A stretch of DNA of 64,000 nucleotides from Octopus bimaculoides (Eukaryota), in the NCBI RefSeq assembly GCF_001194135.2, contig NC_068987.1:49940273-50004272 (forward strand), in the 5' to 3' direction. A program made the translations under genes and the position numbers. The notes beneath the pieces are model-generated. The model was not told where the DNA came from and ran no database searches. It saw nothing but the letters and a program-made list of their open reading frames with translations. Shown here in pieces: positions 1,596-59,945 of this stretch (position 1 is the first letter of the stretch; the number at the start of each line of letters is the position of its first letter).

Positions 1596-1720
1596 CTGGT
1601 TATGAAGATGACATATCCACTCAGCAAATTGTCGTGCATTAGGGATAGTGGCTGATAGAAATACATAGTGTACATTATCAGGAAGGAGGATAATGGTTTC
1701 TTCCCAAACAACACCTCGTT
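1596..1720 (-). CDS. MTREX: MTREX coding exon 7 ([42 protein letters not shown]); gene continues off window start
   Basis: Motif III SAT; ttcag acceptor, gtaagt donor; 125 bp, phase 1 to 0. Confidence 0.97.
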
Positions 1721-1853
1721 CTGAATAGAAACAAAAGGAATTTAAATGACAGAAGAAAATATTACTGAGAGAGAGCTGCAACAGGATTACAGGCAAGCTA
1801 ACCAACAAAATCATTGAGTCAAAGGTAAAAGAGCAATAATAAAAGTAACACAC

Positions 1854-1944
1854 CTTTATCTCTCATATAATGAATCTCATCAAATATCACCCAAGCAACT
1901 TCTCTCATGATCTCTGATCCTCGATATAACATACTTCTCAAAAT
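1854..1944 (-). CDS. MTREX: MTREX coding exon 6 ([30 protein letters not shown]; DExH box)
   Basis: DEIH motif II; ccacag acceptor, gtgtgt donor; 91 bp, phase 0 to 1. Confidence 0.97.
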
Positions 1945-2910
1945 CTGTGGAGAGAAAGTTATTGTAATTACTATAATGTTTGTCAGTATTAAAATGTAAT
2001 TGTTTATAATTAACAAAGAAAAATAAAGAGCTGATATATAGATGTATTGGTAAGGAGTGTCAAAGCATTTGAAGATGCAGAGAATAAGCCAACGGATAAG
2101 AAAACCTATCTATTTCATTGCCATGTTTCAAATGTAAATATTCAAAATTTCTAATGAAAATGCTTGAAAAATAAGCTTCTTACATAAAAATTATCATCGT
2201 AATGGAAGGTTTTAATTTTGATATGAATATGTAAAAAAAAAAGGCAGGTTTTGAATCACAAAACCAGAAATGGTCTCAAGTAGGTTAGTATCAAAAGGGT
2301 TAATTTGATTGTTTTATAAGTTATATCTATCTGACTTGAATCATTACATTTAACCCAAAATAAACAACAAGAGATCCTAATATGATAAAAAATAATTTGC
2401 AAGGCAGTAAAAATTTTATGACATGCCAACAATTAAAGTGTCTTCAATATCTCTCTGGTTCATTGACCTAGAGGTATAAAAGATAAAACTGAACTTCAAG
2501 ATGCTATTTTAACGATAATTTACCTTATGTCCAAATGGCATCAGAAATATTTCAGAAAGCAAGTAAAACAATGATACCTTTCTCAAGGACAACAATATAA
2601 GTAAAATAACTAACTAATAATTAAAACAAGGCTGCTGATACAGCTTAGCTTCAGTTGTACTATAACCATAACAATTTCATACTTAAGTGCTAGTCAACAA
2701 CTTTCTGAAGACCTAGGAATATGATGTTCATGACTTTCTGAAAGATTTAGACTTCAACTAGAAATTAAACTTTAACTCAATTCACAAAATTTCTTGCTCT
2801 ACTGCAATTGTTACTAAGCTACAAATAACAACAAAATTGTTTCTCTGTACAATTAAATCTTCAGTGTAAATGAGCTTCTGCAATAAACAATACAAATTAA
2901 AGAAACTTAC

Positions 2911-3085
2911 TTCAGTTGTCATGACTAAACAACTAGCAGTTGGGTTGATAGTTACATCTCCGGTCATCAAACCAACATCTTGAAACTCTTCAAACAATTC
3001 TCGATATTTCTGGTTGCTTAATGCTTTAATAGGAGATGTGTATATAACACGCTGCTTCTTTTGGAGCGACATTGCAATGGCATAG
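2911..3085 (-). CDS. MTREX: MTREX coding exon 5 ([29 protein letters not shown]...MTTE)
   Basis: Motifs Ia/Ib ([23 protein letters not shown]); canonical AG/GT; 175 bp, phase 2 to 0. Confidence 0.97.
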
Positions 3086-4565
3086 CTGGAAATATAAATT
3101 GATAAATTCTCATTCTAACTGAAGACAAGAATAAATTTATCAAAGCATACTCAAACATGGTGGTTGTTGCTGCTACTCCATTGTCAAACCCGATGCAGCT
3201 TTCTAGCTTGCCAGCTCGTCAAACCATCCAACCCATGCCAGCATGGTAAATGGATGTTAAACACAATGATAATAATTTTTTTCATCTGGTTTGGGTTGGA
3301 TGGACTAGCAAATACAGCATTTCACCATGAATCTCAATTCTACATCTTTTCTTTGAGGCTCAATGCTCTGATTTCTGGCTTACAATAATTTCATCCTCAG
3401 CCATCCTTCGACTGCTATACCACTGATCATTATCATAATTTAACATAAATGTTCGAAGCTGACATGGGTTGGATGGTTTAACAGGCTCCAATGCTTCCAA
3501 AATCTGCACTATACTCCAATGTGCCCTTTAGCATGGTTTCTACAGCTGGATACCCTTCCTAATGCCAACTATTTTACAGTGTTTATTGAATGCATATTTC
3601 ATGGCACCAGCACTAGTGAGGCTGCCATACAGCTTGCATTACTAGGAACCCCAAGAGAGGCAGCTTTATGCTAGATGAGGGGTTAGCATATGAAATAAGA
3701 AGCCATAGCAGAACAGGTTTCTTGCAGTAGAGGAGCTACATGGCTACTCACATTATAGAAAAGATGGGTGTGATTGGGACAGGGCTAAAGAGATAAAAAT
3801 AGTGATGATGAGGTGTTTGAGCAGACCCTCAAAGTAGGAGTGAAGTAGAGGCTGTAAGAGTGTATGGAGGATGACAGATGGGTTAGGGTGAGGGGTTGAA
3901 TATAATGAATGAAAAATAAATGGTGAAGGATAAATAAGGGGAGTTAGGAAGAGTAAATAACGACTCTAAAATGGGGTTGAGAGATGAATGTAGAGAATGG
4001 TTGATGGGGGTGAACAGCAGCAGAATAGTAATGATCAATATAGTAAACAGAGGATGGATGAGAGATGCCATGTATTTGAATAGGTTGCAACAGTGTTGCA
4101 AGAAGTGGGGGAGACAGGTAGGCAGTGCATGGGGAGTGTGAAACATGGTGATAGGAAAAGAAAAATAATTTGGAACCCCCTGCATATCCAAACCAAATGC
4201 CGATATCTCTATATTTCTACTGCCTACTCATTTTCTTAACTCACACGCAACCTTAAAATATTTTGTTGTTTCTGGACAGGGCACTTAATTTCATATACTT
4301 CAGTCCACCCAATCGTGAAGATTAAATGCCAGAAACCAACAAAAACAGATCAACTGTTCTATCTAGTAAATTTACTCACACTAAATCTCTATTTTTCAGT
4401 CAAGGTTACAAGTTGGAATCTAAAGCAGGGTTATTTCTACTGCATGTTAAAAGCTACATATTAAACACCAATTTCCAATATTGGCACAGGTTTACAAATT
4501 TGTAGTAAGTACAATTGACTGAAATTATTGTATTTACTTGTGCTTAAGTGGCACTATTAATAACT

Positions 4566-4748
4566 AAGAGGTAATATTTATCCCCTCTTAATGTGGATGT
4601 TCTTTTAGAACAAACTATACTATGGTATTGTAGCAAGAGTATATTTTGTACCAAAAAGCCAATATGGGAGTTTCTCCCATGGTAACTACTACAGTATAGT
4701 TTGTTCTAATAGAATGTCCACGTTTAAGTGGGGATAAATTTTATTCTT
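4566..4748. mobile_element. Degenerate foldback MITE in MTREX intron 4
   Basis: About 60-bp imperfect inverted arms (ATTTATCCCC.CTTAA..GTGGA..TTCT.TTAGAACAAACTATACT); no clean TSD. Confidence 0.6.
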
Positions 4749-5107
4749 GATTTAAGTGAAGAACATAGGGGAGTGGGGGAGGCAAATTATACATGGAGCA
4801 AAGCTAAACCTATAAAGGCAAAAAATTTTGTACCAAGATTTAACACTAAATTAGGTGTACAACTTATACATGAGTAAATACAGTACCTTAGTAGATGACA
4901 AATACTTATTTCAAGGATACTTGTGAATGAAACATTTCAACATCTAACTCACAAATAAATGATTGTTGTAAGTCACCCAAGGAATTAATGGTTTTTGTTA
5001 ATCTAAAATTTTTTATACACTTGTAAAAATAATAATATCAGATTATCTGGAATGTCAAAAAAAAAAAAGTACTGTAAATCAAGGAGATCTCAAACTGTAA
5101 TACTTAC

Positions 5108-5283
5108 ACAGCAACAACTGTTTTGCCAGCTGATGTGTGTGCAGATACCAATACAGACTGGTTGTTTTCTAAACATAAAAGTGCTTCCTTTTGGAATGGA
5201 TCAAGAATAAAAGGAAATTCCTGAGCAGGTTTTTCAGGGGGAGGTTTCAAAGGAACAAATTCTTCATCAGGAGGTAGAGCAAC
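5108..5283 (-). CDS. MTREX: MTREX coding exon 4 (VALPP...[10 protein letters not shown]...[12 protein letters not shown]; Q motif and Walker A)
   Basis: Ski2/Mtr4 motif [10 protein letters not shown]; cag acceptor, gtaagt donor; 176 bp, phase 0 to 2. Confidence 0.97.
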
Positions 5284-6049
5284 CTGTGCAGAGAGGAAGA
5301 GAGAGAAATTTAAAACACTCTCAATGTTATTATGAAAGCATGATCATTTAAGAAACTGTTGTAATAAATTAAATGCTGAGATACGTGATTAAAAAAAAAA
5401 ATGATTAATAACAGCATTTAAATTATAATAAGTGATCCTCTATTGCGTTTTTCAATAAGAGCATTTCAACAAATTGGTATTTTAATGCTTTTTTTTACCA
5501 TAATTTTATTGAAATACATTATCTTTCTAGCAATTAATTTCAAAAATAATGAAGTATTTAGTAAAATAATTGTGGTTGTTAAGCTGGTGTTTGGAACATA
5601 ATTTAACAGGAAATATTGATAGAAAGATGGATTGTATCTAAGAAGCAGGAGTGGCTTTGGGCAGGGCAGTATCAAAAGAATTAAATAAAGTGGCAAGTTA
5701 TGTAGAAAGACAAAAACATGTCTTGAGCCGTAACTTTAGTCAGCTGTTTTATTGTATCAATTTAGAAAGGAATCACCAATACTGTAAGGCCAAAGGTAGG
5801 CTGCAGCAACATAGACCAAATGGTAAAGAAAGTCAAAAGAAGCGGATGTTGGTGAGCTGTGAGAGAAATTAAACTAACATTTTAGGTTGAAAGCCTCAAT
5901 TGAAGGATTATCAAATCATTGCAGAGTATGCCTGCTTGTGTGTATGCACACATATAGCTAGTACTTCAAAGTCTGTATCAACACTGGAGTGTGAAAAATA
6001 CAGAATTTCTCTACAGAAACTTAAGGCATCATTGTCATTTACCATCCAC

Positions 6050-6265
6050 TTTCCATGCTTGCATGGGTCTGATAAAATTTGTTGAGGCAGATTTTTAACA
6101 ACCAAATGTCCTTCCTGTCACCAACCCTCACCTATTTCCAAGCAAGGCAATATTTCCCATGCCCAGATATGTTTTTAATGGAAAACTGAAAACAGACACC
6201 ACTTGTATTATGGTGATGCTTGTTTATAACCATCATGTAATGTCAAGACAAGGGTACACAAAAGC
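6050..6265 (-). mobile_element. SINE-like family with RTE-type tail and a distinct body
   Basis: Homologous copies at about 19360-19570 (-), 60130-60300 (+) and 63490-63690 (+). Confidence 0.65.
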
Positions 6266-6847
6266 ATATGTGCATGCAGACACACATACATATATTAACA
6301 AGCTTCTTTCATAAGGCAGTGAGCTGGCAGAAACGTTAGCATACCAGGCAAAATGATTAGCGACATTTCGTCTATCTTTACGTTCTGAGTTCAAATTCCG
6401 CCAAGGTTGACTTAGCCTTTCATCCTTTTGGGGTTGATTAAATAACTACCAGTTACGCAATGAGGTCAATGTAATTGACTCCAGTAATTCCTTTTGTCTG
6501 TCCTTGTTTGTCCCTTCTATGTTTAGCCCCCTGTGGGCAACAAATAAATAAACACGCTTCTTTTGGTTTCCATCTACTAAATTCACTTGCTAGGTTTGAT
6601 TGGCTTTGGGCTACAACAGATGATACTTGCTCAAGGTGTCACACAGAACATAATCTCAAAGAAACTGATGAATTGGGTAAAAAGGGTAGAGACTGGACTA
6701 TGTTGTTAAAAATAACTCAAGTATACAAAGGATTGCTTAATAGAGACAAATGATAAAAAAAAACTTAAAGAACTGAAGACCTGTTAAAAGAAAACGAACA
6801 AAAAATAATAATAATGGAACATCATCTAACTTTACAAAATGTATTAC

Positions 6848-6917
6848 CTCATGTGTGCAAGACTCCAAAGTCTCAACTTTGTGGACCTGGATACGAGGCA
6901 TAACTTCTGCAGCTGCA
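6848..6917 (-). CDS. MTREX: MTREX coding exon 3 (AAAEVMPRIQVHKVETLESCTHE)
   Basis: Matches human LMPRVKVQSVETVEGCTHE; tttctag acceptor, gtaata donor; 70 bp, phase 2 to 0. Confidence 0.92.
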
Positions 6918-7726
6918 CTAGAAACAGAAAATTAAAATCAAGTTCAGTTTTAAGAGTTTGTAATTATTACTGCCATCATACACAAATTGGAAAAATGAAA
7001 TTAGAAAACATGAACATAAAATATAATGTCCCACTTAGCATCTCTTACAGAAACACTATATGTAGATTTTAAAATAAGGCTACTATACTGTCTAGACCTA
7101 CACTTTACAACAATATCTCTTGCACACCTACTCAACACCTTTTCTGTTCCTCTATCTATATTCTCTCTCTAATAGTAACCTTGCAAAAGATTAAGTTTAC
7201 CTGTACAAATTTATTAAAACATTGTATCTACAGAATAGAAATTAAATCCAAAATTTGTTAATATCTTAAAAACAGAATTGCTTCAACCAGATCTGCTTTC
7301 TTCATAGAAACCCTTAAATCTAATTTATTTTCAGTGATGAAATAAATAAAGCCAAGAAAAAAAAACAGTCGAATTAGTATTTGTGAAGTTATGAATTTTA
7401 ATACATTATATTTTACATTTAGTTGGAGTCAGTATATTTTCACTGATTCCAGTAAAATACTAAATATTACCAACTTCAACTTGCACAGCTTTGCCTAGAA
7501 CTAATGATAAACAACAGCTATGAGGTTAAGTGAATCAAATCCTTACATTCATTACTTTTGTTTTAAATATCTCCAAGAACTATTTAAAATGTTGCTGCTT
7601 ATCCAAATCTTTAAAAGCTACCCAATTCATGTTAGCCTGGGAAACAGTTTTAAAAGATAGAAATGAAATTGAGTAAAAAATTTACAGATATTTTTACAAA
7701 ATTGTTTTAAAAAACTCAATACTTAC

Positions 7727-7825
7727 GCAAGATCCTCATGGTCAGCTTTTAATTTCTTGGAACTAATTACATCAGGGTTGTCAATCTCTCGCTTTTTAAC
7801 GATACTCCTGAGTAAATCCTCAGCC
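7727..7825 (-). CDS. MTREX: MTREX coding exon 2 (AEDLLRSIVKKREIDNPDVISSKKLKADHEDL)
   Basis: ttcag acceptor and gtaagt donor; 99 bp, phase 2 to phase 2, open; joins exons 1 and 3 in frame. Confidence 0.85.
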
Positions 7826-8749
7826 CTGAATAAGTTAAATTGATGCAAATAATCGCAATCATTTTTATGAAATATTTAATTACTTTAAGAATTTACAAAC
7901 TTTTTCACTGACATTTATTATAATGGTGTTTGTGATCATAGAGTTATTAATTCTAATCAAGCTACAGCTGGTGTCAGCCACCATTTCAAATGGTCTCACA
8001 AATTGCTATGTCTTAGGATGATGTATATGTACCATGTAAATATGAATGGGGAAAACAGTATGATTGAGGCAAGGTGAAGGAGAAATGGGAGAATAATGAC
8101 AGAGAGTAAACGAGTCACTAATTAGAAATTGTTTGCTGGCAAGAAAGAGTGCAAGTGACAGGTTGTCGGGATAGCAATGGTAAAACAGTGATGTCAATGA
8201 CAGAGTAATTTCAGGTGGCAAGCTGGCAAAATAGTTAGCACACCAGGTAAAAAGCTTAGCGGCATTTGGTCTGTCTTCACATTCTGAGTTCAAGTTCCAC
8301 TGAGGTCAACTTTGCCTTTCGTCCTTTCAGAGTTGATAAAATAAATACCAGTTGAGCACTGTGTGCATGTATGTGTGAGTGGGGGTAGGGTTGACCTATC
8401 TACTCCCCTGAAATTGCTAGCTTTTTGTGTCAAAATTTGAAACCAATGACAGAGTGATCTGAAGGAGAGGAAGGGGTGGCTAGTAGTACAGGAAGTAAAC
8501 AGAGGGGTGTATTGAAGAATGGCAATCCCTTGTTACTCAGGCAATGGGAGTACAGCAGTACAAATGGTGACTGGAGAAATGCATATGAACAATACACAGG
8601 TGGCCAAGTGTAGCAAGCAGAAGAGACCGATAACATAAGTGAAGATATTAAAAAGACAAGAGGGGCAGCAGATGGCGACTTAGAAAGAATAAACTAAATA
8701 AAAGTCCAAACCTCCACCATTATCCAAATTTTAATGTGCATTTCACCAT

Positions 8750-9530
8750 GTTTGCACAAGTGGAAAGGTTTTCTTCAGCATTGCCAAATGTCATAACTTT
8801 CTATCATCTTTATGAGGTGTAATATCTTGAAATTAGTCTTCACCACTCCATCCCAAGTTTTTCTCAGTCTTCCTTTTCCCAAAGATTCCATTCACTTCAA
8901 GTGTGTGGTACTTTACACAACCATCACAAGTTGTGGGAGTCAAGTATAACATTTTCAAATAACCAATGCTTCTTTGCAATCTTCTGCAAAGACTTGATTC
9001 AACACTAGTGCATTCAACAAATTTTTGCCTGGGTATATTCAAGTTATGCAGTCTACTTTTCAGACATTGAGTAAAAAAGGCTAAGGATCTGACAAAATGT
9101 GAAGGTAGTCAACAACTCAAAGGGAAATCGCAAATATGACTTCAATGATTTCAAATCAATTTGTTGAATCTTAAACACCAAACCTTTCTTGCCATTATGA
9201 CTATCTTCTTTTTTCTTCCCTCTCAGAACACCAGAAAGTTTATCAAAAGATGAATTTAGATTCCTTCATCAATTGTAGCACTTTCGTTAAATCATATCTA
9301 GACGTCGAAGAAAGTCTAAGTAAAGAATTTGTGCAATTTGTAGCAATGTTTAAAGCTCATCTTATTTCTCATACTGACACTAAACAAGACGTCGCAGAAA
9401 TGAAGTTTTACCGTTTGGTAAGTGGCAATTCTTTGAAGTCTTGCTTTGCAAATGTACAAAATGCCTTGTGCATTTATTTGTCACCCATGCTTACCAAGTG
9501 TTGTGAAGAAGTATTAAAAATTACTTTTTA
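8750..9530 (+). mobile_element. Decayed hAT-family transposase remnant in MTREX intron 1
   Basis: Fragments FQITNASLQS and EFVQF...CFANVQNALCIYL resemble the hAT C-terminal/dimerisation region; stops and frameshifts present. Confidence 0.6.
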
Positions 9531-10289
9531 AAAATTCCTAAAGCATGTAATTAAAAGAACTTGTCAAACATTCAAGAAGCAAAACAAAAAACAAAAACAA
9601 ATACGAAACATTTAATGGAAAAACAGTTTAAATAAAATTTCATCATAAACAAACAGTACGGGAAATGATCCTATCAACAACCGATATTTCACAAAAACTA
9701 TGCTAATATCCTTTAAAAGCTCTTAATCTTTGGATCTCTATTTGGTACCCATATGCGCTGTGTTTAGTATTTTTAAAAAATGGGCCTTCTAGCTTCTGAA
9801 ACGCAATCGAAATGTACCTAAAAATATAAAATATACGCGACAAATTCCAGGGCCATTTTTATTTTTAAAATTCTTTCGTTACAAAACGACATAAAAAAAG
9901 CTTTAATACCCTTTCAAAGTCCTCAAATAAAAAACTACGTTTAAGCTAATTTTTGTATCAAAATTATTTCTTAAAAAATGTTTCCTTTTAATATTATATA
10001 ATGGCAGAGTTGTCGAGAACAGAAATTTGTTCTTTCATTTTCGCTTCATCAGATAACTGTTTAATCGGCCGCTTCGAATGGATTAGAAACGGACTATATG
10101 AAAGTCAAACGGATGTTTTAATAAGACACAACTACTGAAATTTTACAAATTTGTATAAAATAGAATTAAAGCAAATTTAACACTTTAAATACTTGAACAA
10201 GGGGGAAATGGGACGTGTACAACACGTGACAATATGGGAACGCATAAACATGAATATTACTTGATAATTATTATCAAATTGAATCTTAC

Positions 10290-10405
10290 CTTTGTGTATC
10301 CTCAACCGATATTTTCTCTTCTTCATTTTTTTTATCAGTTACTTTAGAATTCTCGGCTTTCGACTCAAATATATCGAAAAGATCGTCTCCGAAGGTGGAC
10401 GCCAT
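10290..10405 (-). CDS. MTREX: MTREX/SKIV2L2 (Mtr4) coding exon 1 (MASTFGDDLFDIFESK...)
   Basis: ATG at 10405; N-terminus resembles human MADAFGDELFSVFE; GT donor (gtaaga) follows; 116 bp, phase 2, in frame with exon 2. Confidence 0.9.
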
Positions 10406-10436
10406 CTTCCAATTTACGGATGTGGCTTCCGGAAGT
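10400..10436 (-). promoter_or_regulatory. Housekeeping-type promoter motifs at the MTREX start: YY1-like CGCCATCTT over the ATG and palindromic ETS site CTTCCGGAAGT
   Basis: Motifs read at 10400-10408 and 10426-10436, inside a locally CpG-retaining stretch. Confidence 0.5.
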
Positions 10437-10530
10437 AACAGGAACAAGGGCGATAACCAAAGAGAATAAGTATTAGTTTCATATTAATATAAAAACCGTG
10501 TTACTTTATGGCTGTAGCTATTATTATTAT

Positions 10531-11299: not shown

Positions 11300-11870
11300 C
11301 CGTTTTGAACTAGATCTGGACAAGGCAACAGAAAAAGAAATGGAGAAGGGATTCACTATAGTTAAAAAGAAAAGAAGGAGAAGCAGAGGAATGAGTTCTC
11401 CGCCAGAGAAGCAGAAAAAAAAGAGAGAAGAGGTGAGAAAAGAAACTGTGAAGTAGGGCAGTAGGAAGGAAAAAGAAAGTGGAGTTACCAGTGGAGAAAG
11501 TGTCAGAAACCTAACTGTATGAAGGTGAAATGGAGAGACTATTTATGGAGGAAGAAAAGAGAGAACCAAAAGTCCAAGAGAAAGGAAAGAAGATATGAGG
11601 AGAAGAAGGAGTATGGTATTATGTAACGTACCCAATAAATGTTGAAACAGAGAAAAAAATAATCAAGTTACACTCAATAGTAACAGTGAAGGTGCCTTCA
11701 TACGTCTACGTGGAGGATATGAAGGCAATATTGCTAGAAGAGGAAAACTACAGAAAATTGAAAGAGATGTGTGGAGATAACATTGACCCGCCAGGAGTGG
11801 AGGTGGAATTTAAAGAGTTGCCACCAGTGGTGGATTTAAGAGATATCAAACCAGTAATGAAGTTCTAAAG
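11300..11870 (+). mobile_element. Possible degenerate non-LTR retrotransposon ORF1 fragment
   Basis: Purine-rich; translates to EKGFTIVKKKRRRSRGMSSP, a pattern common in LINE ORF1 N-termini. No decisive domain seen. Confidence 0.3.
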
Positions 11871-14800: not shown

Positions 14801-14993
14801 CAAGGGGGAGCTGAAAAATTCCTGGCTTTAAGGGTATTGTAAAAGGCCTGATTGGAGGCCCAACCTTCTGAGATCTTTTACAGGGCTTAGAAAACCTGAA
14901 GAACCACTTCAATAAGTGTGTGAATCTGAGAGGGGAAACTGATCCTCCTGTATTTTCTTTACCCCAAAGAAGAAACTTTTCAGCACATCCTCA
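14801..14993 (+). mobile_element. Mariner-derived MITE, second copy
   Basis: Same TIRs and interior as 368-584, TA flanks. Confidence 0.8.
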
Positions 14994-15427
14994 TATATAT
15001 ATATATATATATANNNNNNNNNNNNNNNNNNNNNNNNNNNNNNNNNNNNNNNNNNNNNNNNNNNNNNNNNNNNNNNNNNNNNNNNNNNNNNNNNNNNNNN
15101 NNNNNNNNNNNNNNNNNNNNNNNNNNNNNNNNNNNNNNNNNNNNNNNNNNNNNNNNNNNNNNNNNNNNNNNNNNNNNNNNNNNNNNNNNNNNNNNNNNNN
15201 NNNNNNNNNNNNNNNNNNNNNNNNNNNNNNNNNNNNNNNNNNNNNNNNNNNNNNNNNNNNNNNNNNNNNNNNNNNNNNNNNNNNNNNNNNNNNNNNNNNN
15301 NNNNNNNNNNNNNNNNNNNNNNNNNNNNNNNNNNNNNNNNNNNNNNNNNNNNNNNNNNNNNNNNNNNNNNNNNNNNNNNNNNNNNNNNNNNNNNNNNNNN
15401 NNNNNNNNNNNNNNNNNNNNNNNNNNN

Positions 15428-16703
15428 GATCCATTTGACAGAGGTAGTAGAGAGCCAATCTGATCTTGATCTTGAAAGTTTGCATGAATTCTGGCTCTTG
15501 AAAGTTTGCATGAATCCTGGCTCAGTTATTTCTCTTTTGGCTCCAAATGATGTCATCTGTAGTGCAGCATTGTATTGCATAATTTTGTTTTGGAAGTGCT
15601 TGGAATCTTGGTCAGTTGATGACAACAGCTTCTTCAATTCCTCTGGAGGTCGGGGGATTGCAGGGAGTTCGACCTTTCCACCACTGCAGCACAGTGCAGG
15701 TATCTCTCCAGGCCACTTTCTTGCTTTACAATGTATGCACTCTCTTGTCATTGCACCAATGGAAACTCTAGTGTCATCTCCAAAATGAACTGCTGGATCA
15801 TAATTGAAAGCTGCTTCATAGAAGTTGCTTCTCCGAGCTGTTGCAACTGCTCTTTGTTCTCCAGTGGAGATCCTATTCCTTGTCAACCATGCATACCGCT
15901 GTTCATCACTTTGAGATGCTCTGGCTTTTGTAGTGCACAGTCTGTTCATTTTTTGGTATGCTTCTCTTTCTGCTGCTGTCTCTCTTTCCCTGGACAGAGA
16001 CATTCTTTTGGCTGACCTTGACATTGTAGTCAAATTTGACACTTTTCTTCTAGGCATGGTTATATATGTATACAGAAATACACAGGTGCAGAAGATAGTA
16101 AACAATGAAAATAACTGTGTAACAGAAATTATATTTCTTAATACAACAGGCAGAATGTAAATAAGAAATTTTCATGGAAAATAAAGAATTATACAGGTTG
16201 AAGTGAAATTTATCACTTAGGGAACCAAAGAGCCAGTATCAAAGGAACCAGAAAAAAGCTGTTAACAGAAAAACACAAAACCATTGCAAAAGTAAATAAG
16301 AAATTTTTAGGGAAATTAAGTGTACAGATTGAAGTGAAATTTATGAAGTTACTTCTGTCAGTAAATTATGTATGAAATTATTTTCATCAGTAATTGTGAA
16401 TTTCTTTCTGTCAGTAATTTGTCACTGTTGTTTGTAAATAGCAATTGAAAACAATAGCGATTGAACTTAAAGTGTAAACAATAGCATCTGAAAAATGAAA
16501 GTGAAAAAAAACAACAGGGAGTGAGTGAGATATAGAGAGAGGGAGAGAGAGAGCTAGCTAGTTAGACAAATAAGATAGATATAGATAGATAAGACAGACA
16601 AATAGATACAGAGAGATAAATAGATAGAGATGGTTAGAGAGATGTAGAAAGATAGAGATATGCGCGAAAAGCGAATACACACACCTCTATTTTATATATT
16701 AGA
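15428..16703 (-). mobile_element. Helitron 5' part with disrupted Rep N-terminal ORF (ATG 16057)
   Basis: A|TCTAATATATAAAA terminus at 16703; ORF has CIHCKARKWPGE...CCSGGKVELP, YNAALQMTSFG, PGFMQTFK and an out-of-frame IGSLLP, typical of Helitron Rep N-terminal regions; 3' part lost in the gap. Confidence 0.9.
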
Positions 16704-22065: not shown

Positions 22066-23526
22066 CCAAATTTATCTTTTACATGATCAAAGAGAACAGA
22101 GATAATTTTCTGAAATAGTGTTCTGAATATTTTATAGTGTTTTCAAAGCATTTGGAGACCATTTGCTAAACAGTTATGGTTTTCGTAAGGTAGTGAACAT
22201 TTGTGAAATATATTGTTTTCTCAAAGTAAAAATTGCAGTAAACATTACTCACTGCGACCCCACCCTCGCCCTATGAATTGCTTCATACACTACAATATTA
22301 ACTCTATTGTGCGAAACATTTTATCGCGAATTGATTAATGTAAAATCTATATACCATTGATAGTCAAACAGAACATATATTAGTAATTCATTGAAAACAT
22401 GTTTACATCTGACCCTCGTACTATGCCTAAGACTTGAGTTGACTCAACAATTCTAGGTATGCATCAACATACTATTAACCACCTCAACCTTGAACAATAC
22501 GAAATAAATAAAAAAAAAACACTATCGTAACCCTAGAAGTCTTGTTTACATCTTCATAAGATAAGATTTATATGAGTAGTAAGTTTGGTGAAAGACTGAA
22601 TAAGCTTGTCTTTGTTGCTGACAGGCGTGTGTGTGTCAGAGAGAGAGGATGTGTGGTGTATTGTGCGTGTGCTTTGATGTGTGCTTTTGCTTGTTTTCGT
22701 AGTTCACTGTATTTGCGAGTGTCTGTATATGTACCTAAGTGTATTTATGTAGCCGATTGTGATTGTGTGCAAATATTTGAGGGTGTGTACTTATATTTGT
22801 ATCTTCTTTTGTATATAATGTTGTTTAGCTCTAAATCAGATTTCATCGAGCTACCCTTATGGTTAGAGACATTGCAACCATAATTATCCTATGTATTTAC
22901 TTGTACTCTTCTCTACATTATTCTGATATATATTATCCCATTTTTTTTTCAAGAGAGTAGGAGTAATTTGAGGGAGATTCGGTTGCTAATTATTAACAAG
23001 TCAGACGACCACGTGTTGCAAATGTAGAAAAACCTCTCGCCCGCACTCAAATTTAAAACCACCAAATGAAGAAGTTTTTTAAAAAGACCTTTAGATAGTA
23101 AAAACACACAAAAAACCCTTATGTCCAAAACAATACTTTAATATAAATTGCATTTTCTATGAATTAAAATTAAAGATTCGTTTATTTTTCTCAACAAAGA
23201 TACACCCTACAGGCTCTTACGATTTTGTAATTCGACCCCAGTACTAAAACGTTGCTCCCCACCCGCCATTGATATAGAGGTTCCCCTCATTGGCTCCGTG
23301 TTTGTGTGCTGAGAAGTGGGTACGTTTGCTAAGAAGAGGGTATTGCACCTCTGTATACAGCCCTTGTGGCTAATTAAATGAAATAAAGAAGAGGGTATGA
23401 GGGAAGAATTTGTTCATGTTTACGGGCTCCTGCTGAACATTTTCCCCCTATGTTCGCGACATGAATATGCTGTTATACTTAGGCAGACTACACCCATGTC
23501 TTACGTTTGTGTATATGTTAATGGGT

Positions 23527-24219
23527 GGAGTCTGGACAAAAGCCCCATAATTAAAGTGTGAAAGTGGACAAAAGACCCAGTTATATTTTTGGATCTGTCA
23601 TTAGATTGTGGTCATGCCGAGGTACTGCCTTAATTATTAGTTGAATGTATCAACCCCAGTATTTTTTCTTTTACTTGTTGCAGTTATTAGACTGCGACCG
23701 GCCATGCTGGGACCCCACCTTAAAGAATTTTTAGATGGCTGTATGGAACCCAGAATTTTATTAAGCTTGATCAAAACTACTTCTGTGATATATTTCGTTT
23801 TTTTGTTTTCTTTTTACTTGTTTCAGTCATTGGACTGTGGCCATGCTGGGGCACCGCCTTGAGGAATTTTTAATCGATACAGTTGACTAAAAAATTCTTG
23901 AAGGTGGTGCTCCAGCATGGCCGCAGCCTAATAACTGCAACAAGTAAAAATGAAAAACAATTCTAGCGTCGATACCTTCGACTAAAAATTCTTCAAGGTG
24001 GTGCCCCAGCATGACCGCAGTCTAATTGCGTCAAGTAAAAAGGATAAAAAATTCTGGAGTCGAAACGTTCAACTAAAAATTCTTCGAAGCGGTGCTCCAG
24101 CATGGGCTACAGTCTGATGACTGAAACAAGTAAAAGGTGAAAAAATAACAGAAAAAATATTACAAGTGGAGCTTTTGTCCACTTTCACACTTTAACTAGG
24201 GGGATTTTGTCCGACACTC
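23527..24219. mobile_element. Non-autonomous Mutator-like (MULE) element containing mirrored SINE-tail modules
   Basis: 9-bp direct repeat TTAATGGGT at 23518-23526 and 24220-24228; imperfect 48-bp TIRs at 23527-23574 and 24172-24219 (GGACAAAA.CCCC..A.TTAAAGTGTGAAAGTGGACAAAAG). Confidence 0.8.
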
Positions 24220-27200
24220 TTAATGGGTATATATACGTGTTTCTAGTAAATATTTCTTCCGGCTCTTTACGTTCTAATTTCAAATCCAGCTGAAGTCAAT
24301 TTCACCTTTCATCCTTTCATTGAAGTATTGGAAGAAATGAGTTGGCACGCATACACATATGTTGTTGTTTTTAATAATGGTGTGGTCAAATGTCATGCAG
24401 TTCTATGTCATAATTGAGGTCCGTGTACATGTGGAACAACAACCATTTTCATGTTATCAAATCCTACATACGTAATTCAGCTTCAGTTACCCTTATTCTA
24501 ATCTGCCTTGTTGATCGTGTAAGATTTTCTCGTTTAACAACCCTCACCTCTACATTTGGCTTCTGTTCGAGACACCACCCACGCGTGGTGTGACGTTCTT
24601 TAATGCTTGTTTAACGATGTAAACAAATAGGATGCGCCCTCTCTTTCAGAACACCCCTACATAGAAACAAACTGCACAATTATTCCTGTTGTTTTTTATA
24701 ATTTTAAATGTTGATAAGTAGCATATAAATACACGAACAATACCTAGATTTATAATAAACATATGGGAATACAGCTTAAGAAAGTTTTTAAAAATTTACT
24801 GTTTAACGCATGAATTAAGTTATGCTTCATTATGATTTGTAAACATTGGCATACAGCTATAGATATGCAAGGAAGAATACAGTCAATCGAAATTAATATT
24901 AGCATGCAATATACATTTTAACGATCGTAGAAGGGCGGAAGACTAATAGTTTCTGAAAAATTTGGACTCCGAAATACAGATTCAGCAGTGAATGTGCAGT
25001 CCCAGTGAGTTAGACTCAACTAGTTTCGACATCACTTTTCATATGTTAGACCTGTAAGTAATAGTAAACACTGCAACAGTAGGTAGGTAGATAGATAGAT
25101 AGATGCATATATTTATACTTCTGCATATATTTGTACACGCACGCAGCACATTCCTGTTCACATTGTTAAAAACAACACACCTAAATCATACACACACACA
25201 CATCAACACAAAGAACGGTTTCTGATTTAGGCACATGGCTGGCATTTTAAAAGGGAGGGGTTAGTCGTTGCAATCAACCCAGTACTTCGTTGGTACTTTT
25301 ATCGACATCTAACTGACGGAAGACTTCGGTAGGATTTGAAACCAGAACGTAAAGCGCCGGAAGAAATACCGCATGATATTTTGTCTAACTTTAATCGATA
25401 TAATGTAGCGCGTGTGTATATGTTATAGGTATGTATATATGTACATGCAAACTATGTAAATAATTATATACATATATAGACATATATTACACACACGTAT
25501 ATATAGATTGATAGATATACGTGTTCATATGCGCGCGTGCGAGGTTATTTACTTGCTTATTAACCAACACAACTCGAATGTTAATTAAAAAAGATTTTTT
25601 TAAAATTAAGCCTTTCGTTTTTTTTTCTTCAAATGATGCCTTTAGTAGTATTCCCATACGGACAGGAAATAATGATGATAGTGATGCTGTTATATAAGTA
25701 TCTCGCTAAACTCTTTTAAAAGTCCCGTGTCCGAACTAACAAACACGCCAAAAGATTTATTTCATCATCCCCATTAATAACAACATTATTATGGAATTAT
25801 TTTGAATAAGAAGTGTAAATGAAGTTAAAACAAAAAAAAGATCCTACGAGAAATATTTAAAAACAATAACTTGAAAAAAAAAACGAAAATTGAGTTGTAT
25901 TTTTATTCATTTATTATAAAAGAAAATTAATTGTGCCTGGTGTAGTGTGGATTTGAATTCCGTTTTATTTTGGTCGTGAAGGCATTCTTTATTTGTTTGG
26001 GATGAAAACAATAGAAAAAAATGAAAAGAAGAAAAAGTACGGAAGGCTAGATGTGCAGAAAATGTGTTTCTACCTCCGTATTCTGTCCTTGACCGATATA
26101 CAATATGGTAAACAATATTTTCTTTCGCATCTGGATGACACGCAAATAATAACAAATAAAACTTATTTCATAACAAATAAAACTAGTTATCATTAATCCA
26201 TTTTTATATTGCTTTTTCTCTTCCACTTAAGAAATAAATAGTTACTAATACTATAGAAATGAAAGAAATTTAAATTATATTCTTTTTTTTTCCTTTCTTT
26301 AATTTTACCGATTTTGTTAAGCTCTTCTCGGTTACATAGGGACAAGTGGATAAGACTTTTGCTATCTGGTTATTGGAGTCGTAAATTCAAATACTGTGAA
26401 AATATCCTGTTTTGAGCAGCATCAGTTCATTTCTCTTTGCTTTGGTGACATACAGCAGGATTTTCTGAAGAAAAGATAGTTAAGGCATGGAAACAAGAAT
26501 TATGATGTTTCGTGTTGTCATCCAGAAAGTGAAAGTACTGATGTCATCAAAGATCGGCATATCTGAATGGATGTAAAATACTGTTCAGTGGTACTCAACT
26601 AAATTCGCTAATGAAATGGAGCTGGGAGAATGTTTTTCCGTTTTTCTTTGAAATTGGAGATTGAGCTATGTGAAAAGCATTATATCATACGGGAACATTG
26701 AAAGTGTGATTAACTTTCTTGCATCATTGGAAATAATTAATTCCTAATTTAGCAGCAATGAATCAATGTTGTAATGGTTCTGTTTAATGACTTGTCTCAC
26801 ATATTTAGATGGAAAAGCTTGGTAGTGTTAGACAAAATTCTTTCTTCACTCGGTCTCATATCCTGTTGTTGGGCTTTAGGCATTGGTGGACAGTTGTTGA
26901 AAGAAAACAATGTTGTTATGGAGCAGGTTGGTGTTGGTAGTGGAGCAGTAGTTAACTGTTGTAACTATTTTAGAGTTATATGTGCTATAGCAGTAGTTAA
27001 CTTGTAGTTGTATTTTAGAGATGTATGTGCTATGTGGTAGATCAATCATCCTATACAGATTGGTGGAAATGGTTTACAAAATTTATTAAATGTCTTCCAC
27101 AGTGTTATCCAGTCTAATTCTTATATTTTAGTCTATTATTAAACAAATTAAAATAAAATAAATCAAAAGAAATTCACAAAAACAAAATCAGATTTTACTA

Positions 27201-35285: not shown

Positions 35286-36305
35286 ATCATCATCGTTTAA
35301 CGTCCGCTTTCCATGCTAGCATGGGTTGGACGATTTGACTGAGGACTGGTGAAACCGGATGGCAACACCAGGCTCCAGTCTAATTTGGCAGAGTTTCTAC
35401 AGCTGGATGCCCTTCCTAACGCCAACCACTCAGAGAGTGTAGTGGGTGCTTTTACGTGTCACCCGCACGAAAACGGCCACGCTCGAAATNNNNNNNNNNN
35501 NNNNNNNNNNNNNNNNNNNNNNNNNNNNNNNNNNNNNNNNNNNNNNNNNNNNNNNNNNNNNNNNNNNNNNNNNNNNNNNNNNNNNNNNNNNNNNNNNNNN
35601 NNNNNNNNNNNNNNNNNNNNNNNNNNNNNNNNNNNNNNNNNNNNNNNNNNNNNNNNNNNNNNNNNNNNNNNNNNNNNNNNNNNNNNNNNNNNNNNNNNNN
35701 NNNNNNNNNNNNNNNNNNNNNNNNNNNNNNNNNNNNNNNNNNNNNNNNNNNNNNNNNNNNNNNNNNNNNNNNNNNNNNNNNNNNNNNNNNNNNNNNNNNN
35801 NNNNNNNNNNNNNNNNNNNNNNNNNNNNNNNNNNNNNNNNNNNNNNNNNNNNNNNNNNNNNNNNNNNNNNNNNNNNNNNNNNNNNNNNNNNNNNNNNNNN
35901 NNNNNNNNNNNNNNNNNNNNNNNNNNNNNNNNNNNNNNNNNNNNNNNNNNNNNNCATTCTCACCACATGTCCATACCAGCGCAATCATCTCTCTTGCACA
36001 CCACAACTGATGCTTCTAATGTTCAGCTTTTCTCTCAAGATACTTACACTCTGACGGGTATTCACATTGACATTACACATCCAATGGAGCATACTGGCTT
36101 CATTCCTTGCGAGCTTACGTATGTCCTCAGCAGTTACAGCCCATGTTTCACTGCCATGTAGCATGGCTGTTCGTATGCATGCGTCATACAGTCTGCCTTT
36201 TACTCTGAGTGAGAGTCCCTTTGTCGCCAGCAGGGGTAAGAGCTCTCTAAACTTTGCCCAGGCTATTCTTATTCTAGCAGCTACACTTTCAGCGCACCCA
36301 CCCCC
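35286..36305 (-). mobile_element. RTE-clade LINE 3' portion (RT C-terminus plus 3'UTR with (GAT)n tail), spans a gap
   Basis: ARIRIAWAKFRELLPLL...LYDACIRTAMLHGSETW...RWYGHVVRM; the CpG-retaining 3'UTR suggests a young copy. Confidence 0.9.
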
Positions 36306-36722
36306 AATGTATATATTCTTTATTCTTTTACTTGTTTCAATCATTTGACTGCAGCCATACTGGAGCACCACCTTGAAAGGTTATGCTTGAAAAAATCAAC
36401 CCTGGGGCTTATTTTTATGCCTAGTACTTATTCTATTCGCCTCTTTAGCCAAACTGCTAAGTTACAGGGATGTAAACACACCAACATTGGTTGTCAAGAG
36501 TTAATGGAGGGGGAACACAGACACAAAGACACACATGCATAGATACATACATATATACAAATATATGATGGGGTTCTTTCAGTTTCCATCTACCAAATAC
36601 ACTCACAAAGCTTTGGCTTGCCTGAAGCTATAATAGAAGACACTTGCCCATGGTACCACGTAGCAGGACTGAATCTGGAATCATGTTGTTGGGAAGCAAA
36701 CTTCTTACCATACAGCCATGCT

Positions 36723-42925: not shown

Positions 42926-43160
42926 TATACCTAAAAAGATCATGTACATTGGCTAGGAATTGAACTTGGGCTGTCCACATAGCAGGTGAGCATTCTACCA
43001 TTGAACCACTGATGCTTATATGTAGTTGATGGGCAGCTGTCAACATTTTCTATCATAAAGGATTTTTAACTCACTATTTACATAGTTATATTTATAGCTT
43101 TATATGTGCTTCAAGACCCAATTCCCAAAAAGAATTATATATAATATATATATATATATA

Positions 43161-43647
43161 GGCGTTGGAGTGGGTGTGTGGTAAGTAGCTTGCTTACAAA
43201 CCACATGGTTCTGGGTTCAGTCCCATTGCATAGCACCTCGGGCAAGTGTCTTCTACTATAGCCTTGGGCCGACCAAAGCCTTGTGAGTGGATTTGGTAGA
43301 CGGAAACTGAAAGAAGCCCGTTGTATATATGTATGTGTGTGTGTGTATATGTTTGTGTGTCTGTGTTTGTCTCCCCCACCAACATTNNNNNNNNNNTGAA
43401 AGAAGCCCGTTGTATATATGTATGTGTGTGTGTGTATATGTTTGTGTGTCTGTGTTTGTCTCCCCCCCCCCAACATTGCTTGACAACTGATGCTGGTGTT
43501 TACATCCCCATAACTTAGCGGTTTGGCAAAAGAGACCGATAGAATAAGTACTAGGCTTACAAAGAATAAGTCCTGGGGTCGATTTGCTCGACTAAAGGCG
43601 GTGCTCCAGCATGGCCACAGTCAAATAACTGAATCAAGTAAAAGAGC
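43161..43647 (+). mobile_element. SINE family B copy (contains an assembly duplication around a 10-N gap)
   Basis: Near-identical to 41783-42157. Other copies or fragments at about 31215-31690, 31945-32080, 33290-33440, 36320-36722, 37210-37440, 38380-38520, 41140-41395, 43965-44120 and 59980-60125. Confidence 0.9.
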
Positions 43648-59439: not shown

Positions 59440-59945
59440 TAGGAAAGGTATAGGCAAGAACGCCATATGGTATACCCAGTGTAAGCTATTGACAAACGAG
59501 GTGCAGTGGATTAATAAGAAGGTTATCAGAGAAGGTAGTGTTTGTATGTGGAAGATGATTAGGAAATTGATACTCTCAAATGTCCTGGTGGCTCATTAGA
59601 GGCAGTAGGTAATTTCTGCTACCCAGTGGACCAAATTAGTAGTGGGGGAGGTTGCATGGAGAGTGTGAAAGCAAGAATAGGATGGAGGAAATTCAGTGAG
59701 CTGTTATCTCTGTTGGCTATGAAAGGTTTCTCTCTCTCTGAGAGAAAGGAAGATTGTATGTTGCATGTATGCAGACAGCAGTTCTACATGTAGTGAGCCA
59801 TGGATTCCTGAACACATGGAAGTGGGATACCCAGGAGGGCATGAGATGAAGTACTGAAGAACAACCTCAGGGTGCTGAACCGTCCAGACAAGATGACAAA
59901 GGACTGAGATGCCTGACACCTTGCTGTATTCAAGAAGATCCATAC
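59440..59945 (+). mobile_element. Degenerate RTE-clade LINE fragment
   Basis: Diverged homology to 54645-55000 (FCYPVDQISSGG, ARIGWRKFSEL). Confidence 0.6.

What the first reader, a model, noticed from the sequence alone, without database searches (positions are those of the whole stretch)
23518..24228. Mutator-like element whose cargo is a 3+3 mirror-image array of SINE tail modules
Seen: a 9-bp TSD (TTAATGGGT) and 48-bp TIRs enclose six diverged copies of the ~55-85-bp 3' module of SINE family B (CAGTCATTGGACTGTGGCCATGCTGGGGCACCGCCTT). Three are reversed (about 23597-23633, 23667-23734, 23811-23877) and three forward (23883-23950, 23962-24041, 24052-24136). The flip point (about 23880) is within about 7 bp of the element centre (23873), so the whole 693 bp is an imperfect palindrome. 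Established: 9-bp TSDs and G-starting long TIRs are typical of MULEs, and Pack-MULEs capture host DNA. Inference: either a foldback DNA transposon built from retroposon pieces, which could spread SINE tails by cut-and-paste and yield a long hairpin RNA able to silence or be ADAR-edited against the whole SINE family, or an empty MITE later hit by six symmetric truncated insertions, which seems less likely.
Basis: partly seen in the sequence, partly recalled or inferred. Interest (0 to 1): 0.75.

Follow-up and report, generated by a model that had tools for sequence, protein, structure and literature searches.

The report
Foldback transposon built from SINE tails
This is one old, decayed copy of a small cut-and-paste DNA transposon, most likely of the Mutator type, whose interior is a mirror-image array of tail pieces from the host's common SINE; it is a neat structural curiosity with no sign of a function.

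Summary
A perfect 9-bp duplication (TTAATGGGT) flanks a 693-bp element (23527-24219). The element has about 56-bp terminal inverted repeats. Its interior is three reversed plus three forward units that match the last 90 nt or so of the host SINE. The whole element folds into one long hairpin (RNA z = -22.8, DNA z = -34).

New findings:
- The mirror axis lies in the 5-nt loop of the SINE tail's own small stem-loop. This points to one inverted duplication of a half-element, not six separate insertions.
- The ends are 7-bp asymmetric termini followed by repeated GGACAAAAG(C)CCC motifs.
- The same end type occurs in invertebrate-like metagenome contigs. One complete 702-bp element there also has a 9-bp duplication but an unrelated interior. 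Another encloses a FLYWCH zinc-finger ORF, the DNA-binding domain of animal Phantom-type Mutator transposases.

So a Mutator/Foldback-type non-autonomous element is the best reading, and the SINE array is acquired cargo.

Not testable here: other copies in the same genome, the orthologous empty site, and transcription.

The hairpin-RNA, silencing and ADAR ideas remain speculation. I rate this a new variant of a known kind, of modest interest.

The parts
23518..23526 (.). Left copy of the 9-bp target-site duplication, TTAATGGGT
   Evidence: the 9-mer occurs only twice in the window, each time abutting an element end.
23527..23533 (+). Left asymmetric 7-bp terminus, GGAGTCT
   Evidence: It differs from the right terminus. 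The same architecture (a 7-bp asymmetric outer motif inside a 9-bp duplication) is described for Tm1 Mutator/Foldback elements.
23534..23582 (+). Left terminal inverted repeat core, with two GGACAAAAG(C/A)CCC motifs at 23534 and 23566, 32 bp apart
   Evidence: repeats I2 and D6; exact 22-mer shared with the right arm; similar to metagenome element ends outside the bases used for fishing.
23581..23662 (-). Unit L1: SINE 3'-tail module, reversed, the most diverged of the six; its A-rich 3' end abuts the inverted repeat
23663..23800 (-). Unit L2: SINE 3'-tail module, reversed (core 23663-23762), plus about 35-40 nt that weakly align further into the SINE body (AAGCTTA region)
   Evidence: The extension is suggestive only. 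It corresponds to the ~60-nt gap in the arm-to-arm alignment.
23803..23877 (-). Unit L3: SINE 3'-tail module, reversed, the closest to young SINE copies (92% over 52 nt to the copy at 42100). It starts at the hairpin loop.
23878..23882 (.). Apex of the palindrome: loop TACAG of the SINE module's own stem-loop (TCGA-TACAG-TTGA; compare R2 TCGA-TACCT-TCGA and SINE GTCGA-TTTGC-TCGAC)
   Evidence: Direct reading. repeat I1 gives arms 23801-23871 and 23890-23960. Folds.
23883..23960 (+). Unit R1: SINE 3'-tail module, forward; starts at the hairpin loop
   Evidence: (D1).
23961..24051 (+). Unit R2: SINE 3'-tail module, forward
   Evidence: D1, D2; period 91.
24052..24146 (+). Unit R3: SINE 3'-tail module, forward, followed by an A-rich stretch up to the inverted repeat
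24164..24212 (-). Right terminal inverted repeat core, with two GGACAAAA(T/G)C motifs
   Evidence: (I2, I15).
24213..24219 (-). Right asymmetric 7-bp terminus, GAGTGTC when read inward. The same GAGTGTN terminus occurs in metagenome elements L072 and L025.
24220..24228 (.). Right copy of the 9-bp target-site duplication, TTAATGGGT

Best explanation
Window 23527-24219 is a single, decayed, non-autonomous cut-and-paste DNA transposon. It is most likely of the Mutator superfamily, Phantom/Foldback-like type. It inserted here and made the 9-bp duplication TTAATGGGT. It encodes nothing and would need a transposase supplied in trans.

Its interior is acquired cargo: fragments of the 3' end of the host's abundant tRNA-derived SINE. 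Each fragment runs from an internal A-rich linker, or from the tail's stem-loop, to the SINE 3' terminus with its A-rich tail.

The most likely history, all inferred:
1. A SINE 3' fragment came to lie next to one transposon end. This happened either by retroposition into an ancestor element or by template switching during gap repair, as in Pack-MULE capture.
2. The fragment was reiterated head to tail about three times. This happened either by slippage or unequal exchange between the A-rich linker and the A-rich tail, or by serial retroposition into A-rich tails.
3. A half-element broke or stalled in the SINE module's short hairpin, folded back, and was copied. That produced a two-ended palindrome with a transposase-binding end on each side.
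4. The palindromic element transposed to this site.
5. It then decayed. The arms are now about 85% identical, with one 60-bp and one 30-bp indel.

No function is shown. It lies about 13 kb upstream of the first coding exon of an MTR4/SKIV2L2-like gene, and I could find no gene over it. If read through by transcription, it would form an imperfect duplex of about 340 bp.
For: **It is a transposon**
- A perfect 9-bp duplication sits exactly at both ends.
- The ~56-bp ends are not SINE sequence, and they share an exact 22-mer that is unique in the window.

**Superfamily**
- Mutator-like elements make 8-10-bp, usually 9-bp, duplications (PMC5225508; PMC6446971).
- The end architecture matches Tm1 Mutator/Foldback elements: a 9-bp duplication, then a 7-bp asymmetric terminus, then reiterated motifs.
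- L072 886-1587 is a complete 702-bp element. It has the 9-bp duplication AAATAAATG, 65-nt inverted repeats at 91%, and a GAGTGTG + GGACAAAAGCCC terminus.
- L025 has a GAGTGTA + GGACAAAAGCCCC terminus.
- L012 has 107-nt inverted repeats full of the motif. They enclose an ORF that hits Pfam FLYWCH at E = 1.8e-10, 41 bits against a cutoff of 23.6.
- FLYWCH plus a MULE domain defines Phantom-type transposases.
- At positions not used to fish these loci, the window ends match them at 24/36 to 25/34 positions.

**The cargo is SINE-derived**
- All six units align to the last 90 nt or so of ten SINE copies in the window, including the 3' terminus and A-rich tail.
- The relatives with the same end type have unrelated interiors.

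**Inverted duplication rather than six insertions**
- The axis is the loop of the module's own stem-loop, so L3 and R1 share one hairpin.
- The arm-to-arm alignment pairs L1/R3, L2/R2 and L3/R1 at 84.6% identity, with a score of 232 against -14 +/- 13 for shuffles.
- There is no non-SINE spacer between units.
- The right arm has a regular period of 91.
- The element folds as one hairpin with z = -22.8 (RNA) and -34 (DNA).
Against: - No DDE/MULE transposase was seen with these ends. The FLYWCH ORF in L012 could itself be captured host sequence.
- Merlin also makes 8-9-bp duplications.
- The link to the metagenome elements rests on about 56 nt of end sequence, and those loci were fished with a 19-nt pattern taken from the window.
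- No second copy was seen: none in the window, and the exact 22-mer is absent from the prokaryotic-genome and metagenome collections. Family status and mobility of the 3+3 form are therefore unshown.
- Mirror partners are not closer to each other than to other units.
- The inner pair L3/R1 is discordant for a diagnostic variant: L2, R1 and R2 share ACTGCAAC, while L1, L3 and R3 keep the SINE-consensus ACTGAAAC. A simple fold-back model needs later conversion or rearrangement to explain this.
- The unit-level phylogenetic signal is weak. Unit-to-unit identity (74%) is about the same as unit-to-SINE (71%) and SINE-to-SINE (72%).
Confidence: 0.62

Rival explanations
1. An originally empty miniature transposon (little more than the two inverted repeats) was later hit by six independent 5'-truncated SINE retropositions that happen to be symmetric.
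For: - LINE-driven insertions favour A/T-rich sites, including earlier A-rich tails, so head-to-tail SINE arrays can arise serially.
- The units are as diverged from each other as SINE copies are from one another.
- L2 seems to carry more SINE body than the other units.
- L3 is much closer to young SINE copies than the rest (92%).
Against: - L3 and R1 would both have to be truncated exactly in the 5-nt loop of the same hairpin, and abut so as to rebuild it.
- No transposon-derived spacer is left between units.
- R2, R3, L1 and L2 begin at the same A-rich linker.
- The right arm is periodic at 91-94 bp.
- The arm-to-arm alignment is collinear through all three pairs.
Confidence: 0.07
2. The same foldback non-autonomous transposon, but belonging to another superfamily that makes 8-9-bp duplications (Merlin, or an atypical hAT) rather than Mutator.
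For: - Merlin makes 8-9-bp duplications (PMC4482050).
- Merlin families are annotated in Octopus vulgaris alongside Mutator (PMC13282606).
- No DDE domain was recovered here.
Against: - Nine base pairs was seen twice, in the window and in L072.
- A FLYWCH zinc finger lies inside the L012 element with related ends.
- The 7-bp asymmetric terminus plus reiterated motifs is the Tm1/Phantom architecture.
Confidence: 0.18
3. A functional hairpin-RNA locus. The element is transcribed, and its ~340-bp duplex is diced into small RNAs that target the SINE family, or it serves as an ADAR substrate or sponge.
For: - The predicted hairpin is very stable.
- Seven exact 21-mers, and one 24-mer, are shared with SINE copies in the window.
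Against:
- No gene or promoter was identified over the element.
- The arms have decayed to about 85% with large indels, as expected for neutral sequence.
- Most of the hairpin is only 70-85% identical to SINE copies.
- The Rfam hits are generic sub-threshold hairpin matches, 43 bits or less against cutoffs of 58-440.
Confidence: 0.06
4. Not a transposon at all: a local palindromic duplication of a SINE-tail minisatellite, with a chance flanking repeat.
For: Palindromes can form at short inverted repeats without any transposase.
Against: - A direct 9-bp repeat flanking inverted ends is the signature of transposition.
- The ends are non-SINE sequence with relatives in other organisms that have the same duplication length.
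Confidence: 0.02

Closest known systems
Tm1 Mutator/Foldback elements of root-knot nematodes (PMC3169594)
   Same: - 9-bp target-site duplications.
- Asymmetric 7-bp motifs at the outer ends, followed by inverted repeats made of a reiterated motif.
- Mostly short non-autonomous copies, some carrying a captured host hairpin motif.
- The partner transposase is Phantom-type (FLYWCH + MULE).
   Different: - Tm1 arms are arrays of a 14-bp motif. Here the repeat proper has only two 9-13-nt motifs, and the long arms are built from ~90-bp SINE-derived units.
- No autonomous partner is known here.
- There is no sequence similarity to Tm1.
Muta1 and other Phantom-family Mutator-like elements of Aedes aegypti (PMC5225508, PMC6446971)
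   Same: - 8-9-bp duplications.
- An N-terminal FLYWCH transposase.
- Subterminal tandem repeats; Muta1 is called a type 2 Foldback element.
- Hundreds of non-autonomous derivatives with heterogeneous captured interiors.
   Different: - Muta inverted repeats are mostly over 100 bp, with 9-15-bp subrepeats.
- The captured pieces reported are host gene fragments, not mirror arrays of a retroposon tail.
Classical Foldback elements (Drosophila FB; Tetris of D. virilis, cited in PMC9659126)
   Same: - Almost the whole element is two long inverted arms made of tandem repeats, with a tiny or absent middle.
- FB elements are grouped with Mutator.
   Different: - Their arm repeats are element-specific, not retroposon-derived.
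- The arms are much longer.
Pack-MULEs
   Same: Mutator-type ends enclosing acquired foreign DNA that is mobilised in trans.
   Different: By definition they carry host gene fragments. Here the cargo is a non-coding SINE piece, reiterated and inverted.
Miniature transposons carrying internal tandem repeats (pearl/CvA in bivalves, Xmix and miDNA4 in Xenopus; reviewed in PMC9659126), and the metagenome element L072
   Same: - Small non-autonomous elements with inverted repeats whose interior is a short tandem array.
- L072 shares the end type and the 9-bp duplication.
   Different: - Their arrays run in one direction and are not SINE-derived.
- L072's interior (52-bp x 3.6 and 40-bp x 2.8 arrays) is unrelated to the window's cargo.

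Membership tests
Mutator-like elements (MULE superfamily) | Target-site duplication of 8-10 bp, typically 9 bp | tested here: met
   - TTAATGGGT is 9/9 at both ends.
- L072, which has related ends, also has 9 bp.
- Criterion from PMC5225508 and PMC6446971.
Mutator-like elements (MULE superfamily) | A DDE transposase with a MULE domain (PF10551 / PF00872) encoded by an autonomous element with the same ends | not testable with these tools
   - No autonomous copy is in the window or in the fetched loci.
- The only related finding is a FLYWCH zinc-finger ORF inside L012.
- No eukaryotic genome collection was available.
Mutator-like elements (MULE superfamily) | Long terminal inverted repeats (often over 100 bp, some families under 60 bp), often with subterminal repeated motifs | tested here: met
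   - About 56 bp of non-SINE repeat, with two GGACAAAAG motifs per arm.
- The whole arms of about 340 bp are inverted.
- Two of the 14 Aedes families have repeats under 60 bp.
Phantom / Tm1-type Mutator-Foldback elements | Asymmetric short outer termini inside the duplication, then a reiterated motif | tested here: met
   - GGAGTCT versus GAGTGTC, followed by GGACAAAAG motifs.
Phantom / Tm1-type Mutator-Foldback elements | Transposase with an N-terminal FLYWCH finger | tested here: inconclusive
   FLYWCH (E = 1.8e-10) was found only in a distant relative from a metagenome (L012). It is not linked to a MULE domain there.
Foldback elements (structural class) | Long inverted arms composed of tandem repeats, a minimal central region, and the ability to fold into one hairpin | tested here: met
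   The loop is 5 nt.
Pack-MULE | The interior holds fragments of host protein-coding genes | tested here: not met
   The interior is entirely SINE-tail units and A-rich linkers. The ORFs inside are short and SINE-derived, and the 73-aa ORF has no homologue.
MITE (miniature inverted-repeat transposable element) | Short (under about 800 bp), non-coding, with inverted repeats and a target-site duplication | tested here: met
   693 bp with no meaningful ORF.
MITE (miniature inverted-repeat transposable element) | High copy number of near-identical copies in the genome | not testable with these tools
   There is only one copy in 64 kb, and no access to the source genome.
Merlin superfamily | 8-9-bp duplication | tested here: met
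   This feature does not separate Merlin from Mutator.
Merlin superfamily | IS1016-like transposase associated with the same ends | not testable with these tools
   No autonomous copy was available.
   - The units hold only the last 80-130 nt.
- Full copies elsewhere in the window have a tRNA-like head, for example at 42944-43015.

The most novel reading that the evidence does not exclude
The 3+3 palindrome is the master form of a multi-copy family in this genome. On this reading, a Mutator-type transposase spreads SINE-tail hairpins by cut-and-paste. Copies read through in introns or UTRs would give long double-stranded RNAs, which would feed small-RNA silencing of the SINE family or act as major ADAR substrates in an animal known for heavy RNA editing.
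Probability: 0.05. Interest if true: 0.7.

Novelty: new variant of a known kind. Interest (0 to 1): 0.3.

Why it matters
This is a clean example of three known processes acting on one small element: capture of foreign DNA by a Mutator-type element, tandem reiteration, and palindrome formation at a short hairpin.

- The mirror axis lying in the SINE tail's own stem-loop gives a concrete, checkable model for how a one-ended fragment can become a two-ended, mobilisable foldback element.
- It also defines an end type (GAGTGTN / GGGGTAC-like terminus + GGACAAAAGCCC motifs, 9-bp duplication) that seems to be shared across marine invertebrate DNA. That could help classify 'unclassified TIR' and MITE families in mollusc repeat libraries.
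- If the family proved abundant and transcribed, it would be a source of SINE-homologous double-stranded RNA. Nothing here shows that.

Tried and rejected
**Routes to other copies, the ortholog or expression that failed**
There is no expression, editing or polymorphism data.
- The exact 22-mer from the ends gave 0 hits in the prokaryotic-genome and metagenome collections.
- I tried to fish other copies through spurious ORFs. The 73-aa element ORF has no homologue.
- I tried to reach an orthologous locus through neighbouring exons. The MTR4 exon query returned only exon-sized ORFs from many animals, none matching the window's intron flanks. The 89-aa ORF at 11599-11865 has no homologue, Pfam hit or PDB hit.
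- No anchor lies within 10 kb of the element, so the empty-site test could not be done.
- Exact look-ups of three window ORFs were not on record.

**Scans with weak or no yield**
- The two-motif scan gave mostly chance hits in bacteria. I kept only loci that showed extra end features.
- The viral-contig scans gave one promoter-like tandem repeat in a giant-virus MAG and one chance coding match. I rejected both.
- By eye, the ORFs of L025 and L089 held no transposase. I did not scan them against Pfam.
- The Rfam E-value search gave only generic sub-threshold hairpin matches to plant miRNA precursors. I rejected these.

**Ideas considered and rejected**
- The element sits inside an older SINE. 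Rejected: the right flank at 24251-24340 is the head of another SINE family, starting about 22 bp beyond the duplication.
- The six units form a clade apart from genomic SINE copies. Only weakly supported.
- The SINE tail derives from the transposon. Rejected: the units keep the SINE 3' terminus and A-rich tail, and relatives with the same ends lack the module.

Full report
**What is in the sequence**

The 9-mer TTAATGGGT occurs exactly twice in the window, at 23518-23526 and 24220-24228. Between the two copies lies a 693-bp element (23527-24219).

- Its ends are inverted repeats. One search reports arms 23534-23602 and 24144-24212, 69 nt at 81% complementarity.
- Both arms contain the exact 22-mer AAAGTGTGAAAGTGGACAAAAG, which is found nowhere else in the window. 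A profile built from the two arms finds no other copy in the window either.
- Read closely, each end is a 7-bp terminus that differs between the sides: GGAGTCT on the left, and GAGTGTC on the right when read inward.
- About 49 bp follow at 88% identity. This stretch contains two copies of a GGACAAAAG(C)CCC motif, 32 bp apart.

**The interior**

BLAST of the element against the rest of the window hits only SINE copies, with E-values down to 3e-16.

- All six units align to the last 90 nt or so of ten SINE copies. The alignment includes the stem-loop GTCGA-N5-TCGAC, the GGTGCTCCAGCATGGCC core, the CTGAAACAAGTAAAAG terminus and an A-rich tail.
- Three units are reversed: L1 23581-23662, L2 23663-23762, L3 23803-23877.
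- Three are forward: R1 23883-23960, R2 23961-24051, R3 24052-24146.
- The 3' (A-rich) ends of all six face the transposon ends, and the 5' ends face the centre.
- The right arm is a tandem array with a period of 91-94 bp.
- R2, R3, L1 and L2 all begin at the SINE's internal A-rich linker. L2 may extend about 35 nt further into the SINE body (AAGCTTA region), but this is weak.

**The palindrome**

- The left half against the reverse complement of the right half aligns collinearly, pairing L1/R3, L2/R2 and L3/R1.
- Identity is 84.6% over ungapped columns. The score is 232, against -14 +/- 13 for shuffles.
- There is about 60 bp extra in the left arm and about 30 bp extra in the right arm.
- The strand folds into one hairpin: RNA -316.9 kcal/mol, z = -22.8; DNA -175.1 kcal/mol, z = -34.

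**A new point: where the axis lies**

The centre reads TCGA-TACAG-TTGA-CTAAAAAATTCTTGAAGG.

- This is the SINE module's own stem-loop. Compare R2 (TCGA-TACCT-TCGA-CTAAAAATTCTTCAAGG) and the SINE itself (GTCGA-TTTGC-TCGAC).
- Upstream of it lies the mirror image of the downstream sequence.
- L3 and R1 therefore share a single hairpin, and the axis is its 5-nt loop, 23878-23882.
- Two independent retropositions would both have to be truncated in that loop and abut perfectly.
- One inverted duplication that pivots on a short pre-existing hairpin explains the structure simply.
- Palindrome formation at short inverted repeats is an established mechanism. I state that from my own knowledge.

**Which transposon superfamily**

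A 9-bp duplication fits Mutator-like elements (8-10 bp, mostly 9) and Merlin (8-9 bp). No transposase is in the window.

The exact 22-mer is absent from the prokaryotic and metagenome collections. A looser scan for the two motifs at their spacing returned mostly chance hits. A handful of eukaryote-like metagenome contigs, however, carry the same end type:

- **L072** holds a complete 702-bp element (886-1587).
  - It has the 9-bp duplication AAATAAATG and 65-nt inverted repeats at 91%.
  - Its termini are GGGGTAC and GAGTGTG, each followed by GGACAAAAGCCC motifs.
  - Its interior is two unrelated one-directional tandem arrays.
- **L025** has the terminus GAGTGTA + GGACAAAAGCCCC.
- **L012** has 107-nt inverted repeats full of the motif. 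They enclose an ORF that hits Pfam FLYWCH at E = 1.8e-10, 41 bits against a cutoff of 23.6.

At positions that were not part of the fishing pattern, the window ends match these ends at 24/36 to 25/34 positions. That probability is optimistic, because the alignments were optimised.

From the literature:
- FLYWCH is the N-terminal DNA-binding domain of Phantom-type Mutator transposases in animals.
- The Tm1 Mutator/Foldback family shows the same layout: a 9-bp duplication, asymmetric 7-bp outer motifs, then reiterated motifs (PMC3169594; PMC5225508; PMC1702500 abstract; PMC6446971).

This makes a Mutator/Foldback-type assignment the best reading, at about 0.7. It is not proof. No MULE domain was recovered, and the FLYWCH ORF could itself be captured host sequence.

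**Direction of derivation**

The units keep the SINE 3' terminus and A-rich tail. One unit probably reaches into the SINE body. Relatives with the same ends have quite different interiors. So the SINE pieces are cargo acquired in this lineage, and the SINE tail does not come from the transposon.

I cannot decide whether the head-to-tail reiteration arose by slippage or unequal exchange between the A-rich linker and tail, or by serial retroposition into A-rich tails.

**What does not fit neatly**

- Mirror partners are not more alike than other pairs.
- L2, R1 and R2 share the variant ACTGCAAC / TAATAAC, whereas L1, L3 and R3 keep the SINE-consensus ATGACTGAAAC. The inner pair L3/R1 is therefore discordant.
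- L3 is also the unit closest to young SINE copies (92% over 52 nt).
- Conversion or rearrangement after the fold-back would explain this, and the 60-bp indel lies next to L3. This is unexplained rather than shown.

**Context**

- The window looks like cephalopod (octopus-like) DNA, judging from my memory of its SINEs. No tool confirmed the organism.
- Exons of an MTR4/SKIV2L2-like helicase lie on the minus strand from 1386 to 10483. The element is about 13 kb upstream of that gene's first coding exon.
- I found no gene over the element.
- The right flank at 24251-24340 is the head of another SINE family.
- Mutator and Merlin families are both annotated in Octopus vulgaris (PMC13282606).
- If the organism is an octopus, and if the arms were identical when formed, their divergence (p = 0.154, JC about 0.17) and that paper's calibration (JC 0.09 for about 25 My) give roughly 20-25 My. 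This is a rough inference.

**Function**

Nothing indicates one.

- The hairpin shares only seven exact 21-mers, and one 24-mer, with SINE copies in the window.
- The Rfam hits are generic sub-threshold hairpin matches.
- The arms show the indels and substitutions expected of neutral decay.

**Verdict**

The interpretation as a Mutator-like foldback element carrying SINE-tail cargo is supported in structure and strengthened in classification. The functional and 'spreading' ideas remain untested.

It is a new variant of known kinds (Foldback/Phantom-type non-autonomous Mutator elements, Pack-MULE-like capture, miniature transposons with tandem repeats). It is seen here as a single decayed copy, and its interest is modest.

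Noticed in passing
window 1386-10483 (minus strand): Exons of an MTR4/SKIV2L2 (DOB1)-like RNA helicase lie at 1386-1862, 1822-2109, 2785-3114 and 5107-5343. The first coding exon (MASTFGDDLF...) is at 10289-10483. The gene runs off the left edge of the window.
   Followed up: partly
window 11599-11865 (+): An 89-aa open frame that looks protein-like (GEEGVWYYVTYPINVETEKK...) sits just upstream of, and divergent from, the helicase gene. It has no Pfam, PDB or database homologue, and its nature is unknown.
   Followed up: yes
window 14909-16105 (-): A Helitron-like N-terminal ORF (CIHCKARKWPGE... motif, recognised from memory) is interrupted by an N gap. It has no Pfam hit.
   Followed up: partly
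window 62484-63167 (+): A mariner-type transposase remnant, with Pfam Transposase_1 at E = 4.8e-8.
   Followed up: partly
window 35985-36371 (-), 54663-55303 (+), 59563-59790 (+): Three related fragments of a LINE reverse-transcriptase C-terminal region (…RIRIAWAKFRELLPLL…), identified by eye only. The first is directly preceded by a SINE tail whose translation forms the start of the ORF.
   Followed up: no
window 43322-43366 and 43411-43455, around the N run 43387-43396: Identical microsatellite blocks lie 89 bp apart on either side of a 10-N gap. This looks like an assembly gap-closure duplication, not biology.
   Followed up: no
window 49260-49342 (+): A solo SINE-tail unit with no SINE body upstream is closest to unit R1 of the element (78%). 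A weaker second copy lies 141 bp downstream. Tail-only modules therefore exist outside the element.
   Followed up: partly
window 42944-43015 (-): The only tRNA-like hit in the window (tRNA-Ser-like, Rfam 35.5 bits) is the head of a SINE copy.
   Followed up: no
L012 4219-5037, L072 886-1587, L025 ~3729, L028/L089, L060 (metagenome contigs): A shared transposon end type occurs in several eukaryote-like metagenome contigs. It consists of a GAGTGTN or GGGGTAC-like 7-bp terminus, reiterated GGACAAAAGCCC motifs, and a 9-bp duplication. The host organisms are unknown.
   Followed up: partly
L222 6880-6945 (giant-virus MAG contig): Four tandem copies of AAAAAGGACAAAAGCCC lie upstream of an ORF. This is a promoter-like repeat that shares the motif by chance and is unrelated to the transposon ends.
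   Followed up: no
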